From positions 4,960,001-5,024,000 of the forward strand of contig NC_087462.1 in the NCBI RefSeq assembly GCF_036321535.1: 64,000 nt of DNA, given 5' to 3'. The position numbers and the translations under genes are program-made. Source of the DNA: Camelus dromedarius (Eukaryota). The notes beneath the pieces are model-generated. The model did no database searches. It had not been told where the DNA came from and worked only from the letters and a program-made list of their open reading frames with translations. Shown here piece after piece: positions 43,273 to 46,200 of this stretch (the stretch's first letter is position 1; the number at the start of each line of letters is the position of its first letter).

Positions 43273-46200
43273 GACCTCGGCTGCAGTCCAGAAGCTCCCC
43301 AAGATGGCCTGGGGCACGTGCCCTCCAAATACCCTCTCCTCTCATCCCAGAAAGGCCCCCCCTCCCCCTTCCTCACCTATAGTTCAGGGGTTTCTTGTCC
43401 ATCCAGATGAACTCCCCCTCAATGTCCAGGTCCCGGAGGCCAATCCAGGAGCCCCTCTTGTTAGCATGTTTGGTCAGGAAGTCCTGGGGAGCAGGACAGG
43501 GCTGGAGGGCTGGGGAGACGTGCCCGGGCCCCCCTCCCCAACACCACCGCCACCGCCACGAGCATCATCCAGGAGGTGGGGGTGGGATCTTCAGATCTCC
43601 CACCAGTGCGCCATCAGTGGAACCCAGACCCACCTGCTCCTCCTGGCTGTGGATGCTGACCAGCCGCCCGTGCAAGTTGCTGCAGGCAAAGCGGGCCTGG
43701 ATCCATTTCTTGGCGCCCTCGCCGAAGTAGTAACACTTCCTTTGGAAACTGACCCACTTCTCAGGGCACGTGTTGCACGTGGAGCCTGGGGTGGAGGAGA
43801 GGCTGAGGGGGGCGGCTGTGGTGGGCGCTGTGGCAGGTACCATGGTGGGCACTGTGGCGGGGGCCGTGGTCAGCACTGTGGTGGGCACCGTGGCAGGGGC
43901 CGTGGTGGGCACCGTGGCGGGCACTGTGGTGGGCACCATGGCAGGGGTCATGGTGGGCACCGTGGCAGGCACTGTGGTGGGGGCCGTGGTCGGCACTGTG
44001 GTGGGCACCGTGGCAGGGGCTGTGGTGGGCACCATGGCGGGCACTGTGGTGGGGGCCGTGGTCGGCACTGTGGTGGGCACCGTGGCAGGGGCCGTGGTGG
44101 GCATCGTGGCGGGCACCGTGGTGGGCAGCATGGGTACCATGGGCAGGGTGGGTGGCAGCATCTCTCCGGGGGCCTGGGCTGAAAGCAGATCCACCCCAGA
44201 GCCTGACAGAGAGTCCCCCAGGCTGCCGTCTTCCCCGGAGATTTGCTGCTGACCATGAAAGACCAGCTCCACCCCAGAAGCACCTCAACTGCCTACGTCG
44301 TGAGCAGAACGGCAGGCACCACAACCACAAACACCCCTCGGCCGACAGCACTTCAACCACCAACACCATCACCATAAATATATTTGTGGCCTGCAACACC
44401 TTAGGCACCATCTGTCACCACACCACCAGCTCCATGGCCAGCAGCTCCTCAACCACCACTGTCAGTAATGCCTTGATCAGTAGCATCCCTGCGGATCCCC
44501 ACAATGGCCAGCAACACCTCTCTACCACAACTCCACCTTAACCACGCCAGCCACATCTTAGTCACCAGTGCCCACAGCAGTGCTGACGTCAAGAGAGCCA
44601 GCACCACTTCCCCCATGACTGTCCCCACCAGAACCTCCTATAATATCCCTGGCCACCACCATCGTGGCCAGCACCCCCAGAACCAGCACTCTTGACCACT
44701 TTCTGGGAAACTGAAATGATTTCCTTCTAGTTGGTCAGGGGAGCCCGTGCACGTAGTGGGTGGGAGGAGACTGGAGGTCTGGGTACCCCCAACGGCCTCC
44801 ATCAGGGGCCACCTTGTCTTTCTCTCCCCTCGCCCCTTCCCCAAGGAAACTCAGGTCCTGTCACCAGCACCAGCACTCCCAAGCGGGAGGTCAAACCCAC
44901 TGTGGCTGCGTTGACTCGCTCGTGACTTAAAGTAGATTTGCTTCGAGTAATGTTCATGGAGGGCTCCTTGGCTTTGGGGGGATTTTTCTGAGGGGCCGGG
45001 GGCCTGCAGCAGTTTGAGAAACATCTCATATGTCAAAAAGTAGCCAGTGTGTGGCCCCCGGGGGAGTAGCATTAAAACACAAAGAGAGCATCTCTGGTCC
45101 CTTCAAGGAAACTTGGGGGATGGTGCCCTGGCTGGGTGTCATGTGGTCACTGTGACAGAGCCAGCAGAGCCAGGCTCAGACCCCGGGACATGGGGCCAGA
45201 CTTGGCGATGGGGAACTCAAGGACTGAGTGGGAATCAGAAAGTGACCTGTCCAAGTGAGCCCGATCCAGGCTCCCCCTCTCCCCAAGAGGAGCAAAGTGG
45301 GGTTTCTTGCTGGGATTCCCACGACCACACCAGGTCCCAGGAGACAGCACTCCTCCACACCAAGCAGAGATCCTTCCTCTTCTCTGACCTGGTTGGGGCA
45401 GCTGGGGCTTCCCAGGGGTGGAAGGTCAAAACTCAAGGGTGCAGCTAGGATAGGGGGAGCGGGGAGGGACTTCAGGGCTGTAACACCCAAATTCCACCCC
45501 AGGTTAAAGGCACAGCAATCGACTATCTGCTCTTTCTGCAGTCCGCTGGCCTGCTGGGGACACCCCCACAACCCTCGTAACTTGCCAGCATTGCCTCCAT
45601 CAGTGCCACCCCTGGGGAAGACGCCGTGGTCCCCAGTGTCCCCACTGCTGCAGGGGTGACCCCCCTCCGGCCCCCTGGCTGGGTCGGGCAATCCTCCGGG
45701 AGGGCTGTGGCCAAGGGCGTCCTCCCCACGGCTGTCTGCTGAGCGGAGACGGCAGAGGAGAGATCAGGGAAGAGAACCCAGCGATGGTGGGACAGCTTTT
45801 ACTCGGAGGAGAAAAAAGTGTGGGAGTCCCCCACCCAGGCCGGGGGAGGGGACTGTTGGAATCTGAAAGGGCTTACTCGTGTGGCCCCCGTCAGCCCTGA
45901 CACACACGTCAGCACAGATCCATCCACGTCCTCATGCACACACCTCTACTGCACGTTGGAACACACCCGCGTTGTCACACGTGTGCACAACACCCCCGCC
46001 GGCATGGACGCACACACTCACCGTTGGACTCGCGCAGCTCTACCCACAGCTTCTGTATCTCCTCCTGCAGTCTTTCCAGGGACTCCAAGGCCATGCGTCT
46101 CTCGTTCATATCTTGAGTGGTTGGGTTGTTGGTGGGGGGGGCAGGAAGCAGGGACAAAGTGCTTTTACTTTGGGAGGCACAAGAGCAGGCAGACCTCCCT

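What the first reader, a model, noticed from the sequence alone, without database searches (positions are those of the whole stretch)
43786..44202. Candidate mucin-stalk CD23 isoform: 26 x 12-bp repeat in frame with the lectin exon
Seen: directly upstream of the exon 9 acceptor the minus strand stays open and in frame, encoding 26 tetrapeptides ([12 protein letters not shown] variants) with no indel. Two upstream acceptors, CTGCTTTCAG|44178 and CTCTCTGTCAG|44202, are both phase 1, matching the exon 8 donor. Using them would insert 131 or 139 aa of Thr/Pro-rich sequence between the coiled-coil stalk and the lectin head. Known: PTS repeats are O-glycosylated rods, and neck length tunes ligand reach in the neighbouring CD209/CLEC4M family. 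Inference: a length-polymorphic, splice-switchable extended CD23 that could alter trimer geometry, shedding and IgE or glycan avidity. Caveat: GC-rich 12-mers lack stops in several frames anyway, so the open frame alone is weak evidence.
Basis: partly seen in the sequence, partly recalled or inferred. Interest (0 to 1): 0.75.

Follow-up and report, generated by a model that had tools for sequence, protein, structure and literature searches.

The report
Annotated long-neck CD23 splice isoform
The 12-base repeat just upstream of the camel CD23 (FCER2) lectin exon is real and in frame, but the extended Thr/Pro-rich "long-neck" CD23 it would encode is already in the public RefSeq annotation of this genome and about 30 other mammals, although nobody seems to have studied it.

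Summary
Window 43817-44152 (minus strand) holds 28 head-to-tail 12-bp units with no indel, in frame with the first lectin exon of FCER2/CD23.

The proposed isoform is not new:
- The window threads at 100% identity onto dromedary RefSeq proteins XP_031292965.2 (433 aa) and XP_031292967.2 (420 aa).
- Short isoforms using 43785 are annotated too.

Evidence from other species:
- The same Thr/Pro/Ala/Val-rich insert (39-139 aa) with conserved flanks is modelled in 29 species: Laurasiatheria, tree shrew and armadillo.
- A cattle GenBank entry (AXP98869.1) contains it.
- Orthologous DNA keeps the frame in ferret, seal, goat and hedgehog.
- The frame is broken in right whale, Myotis, dugong, galago and sloth.

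Copy number differs among camelid species and assemblies, always in 12-bp steps. No camelid model uses the 44202 acceptor; pig models use its homologue.

Limits:
- O-glycosylation and functional effects remain inference.
- No paper I could search describes the insert.

Verdict: real, most likely coding, already annotated, functionally uncharacterised.

The parts
43634..44178 (-). Extended first lectin (CTLD) exon of FCER2, 545 nt, starting at upstream acceptor A (ctgctttcag|CC, phase 1). It adds 131 aa before the canonical exon.
   Evidence: Exact threading of RefSeq XP_031292965.2, XP_031292967.2 and isoform X2 onto the window.
43634..43785 (-). Canonical first CTLD exon, 152 nt (acceptor ccaccccag|GC, donor gtgggt). 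Used by the short isoform.
   Evidence: Threading of short isoform X8 (P0041, 289 aa); sequence.
43817..44152 (-). The 12-bp tandem array: 28 units with a 24/72-bp higher-order period. Encodes (V/A)P(T/A)(T/M) tetrapeptides.
   Evidence: TRF; unit listing and codon counts.
44153..44178 (-). Non-repeat N-terminal flank of the insert (AQAPGEML...). It is homologous to the ARTPRVTPGETLPP flank in other orders; cetartiodactyls carry an in-frame 12-nt deletion here.
   Evidence: Protein comparison; DNA alignment.
44179..44203 (-). Acceptor region A, the most conserved block in the area (column identity 0.87 over -25..-1 in 9 species). Its AG is at 44180-44179.
44203..44204 (-). AG of candidate acceptor B (exon would start at 44202). 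In frame in camel but used by no camelid model; pig models use its homologue.
   Evidence: (P0231, P0009).
46022..46111 (-). Exon 8, the last coiled-coil stalk exon (90 nt). Donor G|gtgagt, phase 1.
45586..45735 (-). Optional 150-nt cassette exon inside intron 8 (GC donor). RefSeq isoform X2 (482 aa) splices it to acceptor A.
43377..43483 (-). Second CTLD exon.
42863..42998 (-). Last CTLD coding exon, to the stop codon.

Best explanation
The array is the core of an alternative, longer form of the first lectin exon of FCER2/CD23. When the spliceosome joins exon 8 (46022) to the upstream 3' splice site at 44178 instead of 43785, the frame is kept. A 131-residue low-complexity segment (34% Ser+Thr, 24% Pro, one charged residue) is then placed between the end of the coiled-coil stalk and the C-type lectin head.

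Shown here:
- the sequence, phase and open frame;
- identity with annotated RefSeq isoforms of this genome;
- the same architecture in 29 other species, one cattle GenBank entry and two assembled transcripts;
- frame retention across orders in which the repeat units have diverged;
- copy-number differences in 12-bp steps.

Inferred:
- The segment is an extended, probably mucin-type O-glycosylated spacer that lengthens the neck and loosens the coupling of the three heads.
- Neck length is set both by splice choice (short, long, long plus cassette exon, and possibly in-phase acceptors inside the array) and by repeat copy number.

The relative abundance of the long and short forms in camel is unknown.
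For: Annotation of this genome:
- The window threads exon by exon, with GT-AG borders, onto XP_031292965.2 (433 aa) and XP_031292967.2 (420 aa) using acceptor 44178, and onto the short isoform using 43785.

Other species:
- Long isoforms with the same junction (...SN|A...) and the same flanks occur in camelids, pig, cattle, buffalo, goat, deer, hippo, horse, 8 carnivores, pangolin, 6 bats, hedgehog, tree shrew and armadillo.
- Insert composition is S+T 22-47% and P 15-27% in all 29.

Transcript-type evidence in relatives:
- Cattle AXP98869.1, named 'transcript variant X8', carries the insert and differs from the RefSeq model at 2 residues.
- The exact 375-aa buffalo long isoform is also recorded from a Logan run assembly.
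- Mustelid Logan contig L001 has the array contiguous with spliced exons 9-10-11.

Orthologous DNA:
- The extension is a multiple of 3 and stop-free in camel (393 nt), Mustela (321), hedgehog (297), goat (255) and harbour seal (513). The seal has no annotated long form.
- Hedgehog units are no longer 12-periodic, yet only the coding frame is stop-free (stops 2, 1, 0).
- The acceptor A block is the best-conserved stretch around.

Structure prediction:
- AF2 ends the stalk helix at residue 171, the junction, and gives no secondary structure for 172-305 (low confidence).
Against:
- The open frame is cheap at this composition: about 0.32 per frame, with 4 of 6 frames open.
- The frame is broken in right whale, Myotis, dugong, galago and sloth, so the insert is dispensable in several lineages.
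- L001 also retains 214 nt of intron upstream of acceptor A. It therefore shows inclusion of the array in RNA, not use of the acceptor.
- A search for assembled fragments carrying the exon 8|insert junction found none.
- Conservation upstream of the acceptor (0.61-0.67) is about as high as inside the flank (0.64-0.74), so there is no exon-specific conservation step.
- Among array units, CpG decay gives synonymous ACA 10 versus Thr-to-Met ATG 5, which is no clear purifying signal.
- The one biochemical paper on cow CD23 in the library describes only the short form.
Confidence: 0.77

Rival explanations
1. The array is an intronic GC-rich minisatellite with no protein role. It enters RNA only through slow or incomplete removal of intron 8 and low-level use of a cryptic acceptor. 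Annotation pipelines then turn these rare reads, plus the composition-driven open frame, into 'isoforms' that spread between species by homology.
For: - 4 of 6 frames are open, and the chance of a stop-free frame is about 0.32.
- L001 retains intron sequence upstream of acceptor A.
- No junction-bearing assembled fragments were found.
- The frame is broken in 5 of the 6 loci fetched through short-only models.
- Published cow CD23 work uses the short form.
- There is no exon-specific conservation step.
Against: - The same acceptor and frame are modelled in 29 species by two pipelines (NCBI and Ensembl/UniProt), often alongside short isoforms.
- A cattle GenBank entry that is not a copy of the RefSeq model carries the insert.
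- The buffalo full-length long product is recorded from a run assembly.
- The frame is kept in hedgehog and goat even though the units have diverged and lost 12-bp periodicity.
- A Thr/Ser/Pro-rich, nearly charge-free composition is kept in every lineage.
- Using acceptor A leaves the native stop codon in place, so the mRNA is not an NMD target.
Confidence: 0.18
2. The further-upstream acceptor at 44202 is also a working site in camel. It would add 8 more residues (GSGVDLLS) for a 139-aa insert.
For: - An AG with a pyrimidine-rich run is present, 24 nt from A and in frame.
- Pig RefSeq X1 (P0231) and the Ensembl-derived pig model (P0009) use the homologous site.
- The 24-nt spacing is kept in seal, whale and dugong.
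Against: - None of the 21 camelid models listed uses it.
- The spacing is 23 or 25 nt (out of frame) in mustelids, Myotis and goat, and the AG is missing in hedgehog.
Confidence: 0.1

Closest known systems
RefSeq predicted FCER2 isoforms of Camelus dromedarius, XP_031292965.2 (X5) and XP_031292967.2 (X6)
   Same: Identical. The window encodes them at 100% identity with exon 8 joined to 44178.
   Different: Nothing at the sequence level. They are computational models, and their supporting evidence could not be inspected here.
Bos taurus 'Fc fragment of IgE receptor II transcript variant X8', GenBank AXP98869.1 (376 aa)
   Same: Same junction after the last stalk exon, same flanks, and a Thr/Pro/Ala-rich insert of 86 aa.
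   Different: The repeat units have diverged (more Thr/Ser, fewer Pro/Val) and the array is shorter. I infer from the accession type and from 2 residue differences that it derives from cDNA; I did not verify this.
Dectin-1 (CLEC7A) isoforms A and B
   Same: A C-type lectin receptor in which alternative splicing adds or removes a Ser/Thr-rich stalk that is mucin-like and O-glycosylated. The stalk has a function of its own (PMC9788829).
   Different: In Dectin-1 the stalk is a cassette exon with no tandem array, and it lies directly between the membrane and the CRD with no coiled coil. In CD23 it is an alternative 3' splice site extension placed after a coiled coil, and it is a VNTR.
CD209 / CLEC4M (DC-SIGN / L-SIGN) neck-repeat polymorphism
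   Same: A neighbouring type II C-type lectin gene family in which the number of tandem neck repeats varies and sets neck length (my own background knowledge; not tested here).
   Different: Those repeats are 23-residue helical heptad units that build the tetramer stalk and lie in a constitutive exon. The CD23 units are 4-residue Pro/Thr units that cannot form a coiled coil, and they are optional.
Mucin-type PTS tandem-repeat (VNTR) domains such as MUC1
   Same: In-frame minisatellite coding for Pro/Thr/Ser-rich repeats in an extracellular segment, with copy number varying between genomes.
   Different: Much shorter (about 30 units). Ser+Thr is 34% in camel, below the level of classical mucin domains. 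Glycosylation is untested.

Membership tests
Annotated long (PT-insert) isoform of FCER2/CD23 | Exon 8 donor joined to an upstream acceptor of the first CTLD exon in the same phase | tested here: met
   Donor at 46022 and acceptor at 44178 are both phase 1 with GT-AG borders; the protein threads exactly.
Annotated long (PT-insert) isoform of FCER2/CD23 | Uninterrupted frame through the insert into the lectin domain and to the native stop codon | tested here: met
Annotated long (PT-insert) isoform of FCER2/CD23 | Conserved flanks (A-x-x-P-G-E-x-L-P-P-T-L-P ... [14 protein letters not shown]) shared with orthologues | tested here: met
Annotated long (PT-insert) isoform of FCER2/CD23 | The junction is present in RNA of this species | not testable with these tools
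Only indirect evidence from relatives is available.
Mucin-like PTS (O-glycosylated) domain | High Ser+Thr and Pro content, few charged residues, tandem repeats | tested here: met
   Camel insert: S+T 34%, P 24%, 1 charged residue in 131, 28 repeats. S+T is below the roughly 40% that I recall as the usual cut-off for classical mucin domains, so this is the linker-like end of the range.
Mucin-like PTS (O-glycosylated) domain | Extracellular location | tested here: met
   It lies C-terminal to the transmembrane helix of a type II protein, between the stalk and the CTLD.
Mucin-like PTS (O-glycosylated) domain | GalNAc-type O-glycans actually attached | not testable with these tools
   Needs glycosidase or mucinase treatment, or mass spectrometry.
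Neutral intronic minisatellite (VNTR) | Head-to-tail array with higher-order structure and copy-number differences between genomes | tested here: met
Neutral intronic minisatellite (VNTR) | Absent from mature mRNA, and reading frame not maintained across lineages | tested here: not met
   The array is present in the cattle GenBank entry, the buffalo run assembly and the mustelid spliced contig. The frame is kept in 5 of 5 array-bearing loci, including diverged arrays. It is broken only where the array is absent or collapsed.
CD209/CLEC4M-type neck repeats | Roughly 23-residue heptad-containing helical repeats forming the oligomerising stalk | tested here: not met
   The units are 4 residues with Pro in each. 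AF2 gives no helix across the insert.

The most novel reading that the evidence does not exclude
The Pro/Thr neck could be an ancestral placental feature of CD23 that has been overlooked because human and mouse lack it. In this reading it would be a main form in most Laurasiatherian mammals and would have been lost independently in cetaceans, vespertilionid bats, primates, rodents, sirenians and sloths. Neck length would be tuned in two ways. One is repeat copy number. The other is a ladder of in-phase acceptors inside the array: 10 YAG| sites in camel, created by ACG>ACA CpG decay, with one Bactrian camel RefSeq model starting inside the array. The O-glycosylated neck might also act as a ligand or protease shield in its own right, as in Dectin-1A.
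Probability: 0.13. Interest if true: 0.6.

Novelty: already known. Interest (0 to 1): 0.33.

Why it matters
CD23 biology (IgE regulation, antigen presentation, shedding by ADAM10, trimer avidity) has been worked out on the human and mouse proteins. In both, the lectin head sits directly on the coiled coil.

If the long form is made in camels, cattle, pigs, horses, dogs and cats, then their CD23 can carry a flexible spacer of 70-140 residues, probably glycosylated, between stalk and head. That would bear on:
- head spacing and avidity for IgE or glycans;
- the size and stability of soluble CD23;
- antibody reagents and recombinant constructs used in veterinary allergy and parasitology.

For the scan itself the finding is a correct rediscovery of an annotated isoform, not a new element.

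Tried and rejected
- **Read-level test.** No junction counts exist. The word shares of 0.28-0.57 in 14 RNA-type runs exceed what the short mRNA alone would give (about 0.09), but they cannot separate the long isoform from intron retention.
- **Search for assembled fragments spanning exon 8|insert** (alignment A2). It returned only genomic read-throughs and a rodent short junction.
- **Wasted contig look-ups.** Two look-ups failed (armadillo X2, tree shrew X2) because only the longest product of a gene is on record. No armadillo or tree shrew DNA was examined.
- **Coding-constraint tests gave no clear signal.** The conservation profile showed no exon-specific step. The CpG-decay comparison gave 10 synonymous versus 5 Thr>Met, and the events are not independent because of the 72-bp higher-order repeat.
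- **AlphaFold2 with 29 sequences.** Mean pLDDT was 46 and even the lectin domain was poor. It is usable only for where the stalk helix ends, so I ran no fold search on it.
- **Pfam.** Only Lectin_C is significant; there is no family for the insert.
- **Literature.** Five searches and three papers read found no description of the insert. One search was rejected for a syntax reason. Subscription-journal papers on horse, dog or cattle CD23 cDNAs are outside the library.
- **Plus-strand ORFs over the array.** The Gly/His/Arg-rich ORFs of 292 and 160 aa were rejected as mirror images of the repeat.

Full report
**1. What is in the sequence**

On the minus strand, the first lectin (CTLD) exon of FCER2/CD23 starts at 43785 behind the acceptor ccaccccag|GC. 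Directly upstream lies a tandem array. TRF reports 43818-44127 with period 24 (12.9 copies) and period 72 (4.0 copies, 0% indels). Cut into 12-mers in the frame of the exon, 44152-43817 gives 28 units, mostly VPTT, VPAT and APTT, with no indel.

The frame stays open from 44272 through the exon. Both match the phase-1 donor of exon 8 (AACG|gtgagt at 46022).

Four of the six frames are stop-free across the 393-nt extension. Simulated sequence of the same first-order composition is stop-free in a given frame about 32% of the time.

**2. The proposed isoform is already annotated**

A protein search with the open frame returned CD23 proteins that contain the repeat. A profile search then returned dromedary RefSeq isoforms X5 (433 aa, XP_031292965.2), X6 (420 aa, XP_031292967.2), X2 (482 aa) and the short X8 (289 aa). 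A protein-to-genome threading script places all four on the window at 100% identity with GT-AG borders (one GC donor).

- The long forms use exon 8 (46111-46022) joined to 44178-43634.
- The short form uses 43785-43634.
- X2 adds a 150-nt cassette exon (45735-45586) that is also spliced to 44178.

No camelid model among the 21 listed uses 44202. The pig RefSeq X1 and an Ensembl-derived pig model use its homologue.

**3. Distribution in other species**

The same architecture is present in 29 species or models. In each, the stalk ends in ...SN and is followed by a flank like ARTPRVTPGETLPPTLP ([13 protein letters not shown] in cetartiodactyls). A Thr/Pro/Ala/Val-rich stretch comes next, then [14 protein letters not shown] and the CNTCP motif.

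- The species are camelids, pig, cattle, buffalo, goat, deer, hippo, horse, eight carnivores, pangolin, six bats, hedgehog, tree shrew and armadillo.
- Insert length runs from 39 aa (armadillo, almost no repeat) to 139 aa (wild Bactrian camel).
- Ser+Thr is 22-47%, Pro is 15-27%, and charged residues are nearly absent.
- Pfam sees only Lectin_C in the long protein.

**4. Transcript-type evidence**

All of this evidence comes from relatives.

- A cattle GenBank entry named 'transcript variant X8' (AXP98869.1, 376 aa) carries the insert and differs from the RefSeq model at two residues. It therefore looks like an independent sequence.
- The exact 375-aa buffalo long isoform is also recorded from a Logan run assembly. 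That can only come from a spliced, contiguous cDNA-like contig; this is my inference from the source list.
- A 937-nt Logan contig from a mustelid run (L001) has exons 9, 10 and 11 spliced together with the whole array upstream. It also continues 214 nt beyond acceptor A into intron 8. It proves inclusion of the array in processed RNA but not use of the acceptor.
- A search for assembled fragments with the exon 8|insert junction found none.

**5. Orthologous DNA**

Nine loci were fetched. Measured from acceptor A to the canonical acceptor:

| Species | Extension (nt) | State |
|---|---|---|
| Camel | 393 | in frame, stop-free |
| Black-footed ferret | 321 | in frame, stop-free |
| Hedgehog | 297 | in frame, stop-free |
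| Goat | 255 | in frame, stop-free |
| Harbour seal (no long model annotated) | 513 | in frame, stop-free |
| Right whale | 127 | frameshift; array collapsed to about 5 units |
| Myotis | 187 | frameshift plus stop |
| Dugong | 102 | stop at codon 6 |
| Galago | 94 | frameshift |
| Sloth | - | acceptor region missing |

A second cetacean-like contig (P0045) also reads the region in the wrong frame.

Wherever an expanded array exists, the frame is intact, including in hedgehog, where the units are no longer 12-periodic and the other two frames have stops. Where there is no expanded array the frame is decayed; the exception is armadillo, known only from its protein model. This pattern fits a coding extension that is maintained in many lineages and dispensable in others.

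The block just upstream of acceptor A (-25..-1) is the best conserved (0.87 column identity in 9 species). Sequence further upstream (0.61-0.67) is about as conserved as the coding flank (0.64-0.74), so there is no clean exon signature.

Acceptor B is 24 nt from A in camel, seal, whale and dugong. It is 23 or 25 nt away in mustelids, Myotis and goat, and it lacks AG in hedgehog.

**6. Length variation**

Camelid inserts:

| Source | Insert (aa) |
|---|---|
| Dromedary, current RefSeq and this window | 131 |
| Dromedary, older models and a GenBank model | 107 and 91 |
| Bactrian camel, current / old | 131 / 123 |
| Wild Bactrian camel | 139 |
| Alpaca, new / old | 107 / 87 |

All differences are multiples of 4 aa. 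Part of this may be assembly collapse rather than true alleles.

One Bactrian camel model (X5, 348 aa) begins inside the array. The window has 10 in-phase YAG| sites inside the array, all at ACA|G, that is at decayed ACG codons.

**7. Mechanism**

This is a competition between two 3' splice sites, both phase 1.

- The canonical site has the stronger pyrimidine tract: 15 of 18 pyrimidines, against 10 of 18 at A (counted).
- Use of A keeps the native stop codon, so the mRNA should be stable.
- The product places a Pro-rich, Thr-rich, uncharged segment between the coiled coil and the head.
- AF2 ends the stalk helix at residue 171, the junction, and assigns no secondary structure to 172-305. The model is poor overall (mean pLDDT 46), so this is weak support.

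That such a segment is O-glycosylated and acts as an extended spacer follows from general knowledge of Pro/Thr-rich extracellular repeats. It is not shown here.

The closest functional precedent in the library is Dectin-1. Its stalk-containing isoform A is mucin-like and O-glycosylated, and isoform B lacks the stalk (PMC9788829). The CD209/CLEC4M neck VNTR is analogous in outcome (neck length) but structurally different, because its repeats are helical heptad units.

**8. Literature**

Five full-text searches and three papers read found no description of this insert. The cow CD23 biochemistry paper (PMC6791321) describes only a coiled-coil neck and the N-terminal splice variants. Subscription-journal cDNA papers are outside the library.

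**9. Verdict**

The feature is real and most likely coding (0.77). It is already present in public annotation, so it is not a discovery. The main rival is an intronic minisatellite with noisy inclusion (0.18). What remains open is expression level, glycosylation and function.

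Noticed in passing
window 45586-45735 (-): A 150-nt cassette exon inside intron 8 (acceptor ctcagcag|AC, GC donor CTG|gcaagt) encodes 50 Gly/Pro/Asp-rich residues. Dromedary RefSeq isoform X2 (482 aa) splices it between exon 8 and acceptor 44178.
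   Followed up: partly
window 50335-50338 (-): Tandem acceptor (cag|cag) at the start of the transmembrane exon. Models differ by one Ala (..RHQADFSKF versus ..RHQDFSKF), a NAGNAG-type choice.
   Followed up: partly
window 50965-51024 (-): The alternative first coding exon (MTPHGQAEG...) threads as 51024-50967 and is followed by a normal GT donor (CAAG|gtagag).
   Followed up: partly
window 46112-46237 (-): The 126-nt intron between the last two stalk exons is open and in frame. A Bactrian camel RefSeq isoform (X6, 344 aa, P0043) retains it, adding 42 residues to the stalk.
   Followed up: no
L009 5264-6290 (sloth); L008 and window ~44300-44800 by eye: Intron 8 upstream of the acceptor region holds a second, GT-rich minisatellite of about 47 bp (12 copies in sloth by TRF). 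Copies are visible by eye in dugong. In camel only degenerate remnants remain, which TRF does not call.
   Followed up: partly
L001 1-214: The mustelid RNA-derived contig keeps 214 nt of intron 8 upstream of the alternative acceptor while introns 9 and 10 are removed. This suggests slow or incomplete removal of the 3' part of intron 8. The in-frame reading of that stretch has no stop within the contig.
   Followed up: partly
L005 (right whale) and L007 (Myotis), about 130-190 nt upstream of the CTLD exon: Independent frame-breaking changes were seen: a collapsed array plus an indel in the whale, and a 2-nt loss next to the canonical acceptor in Myotis. Acceptor A itself is still intact in both.
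   Followed up: yes
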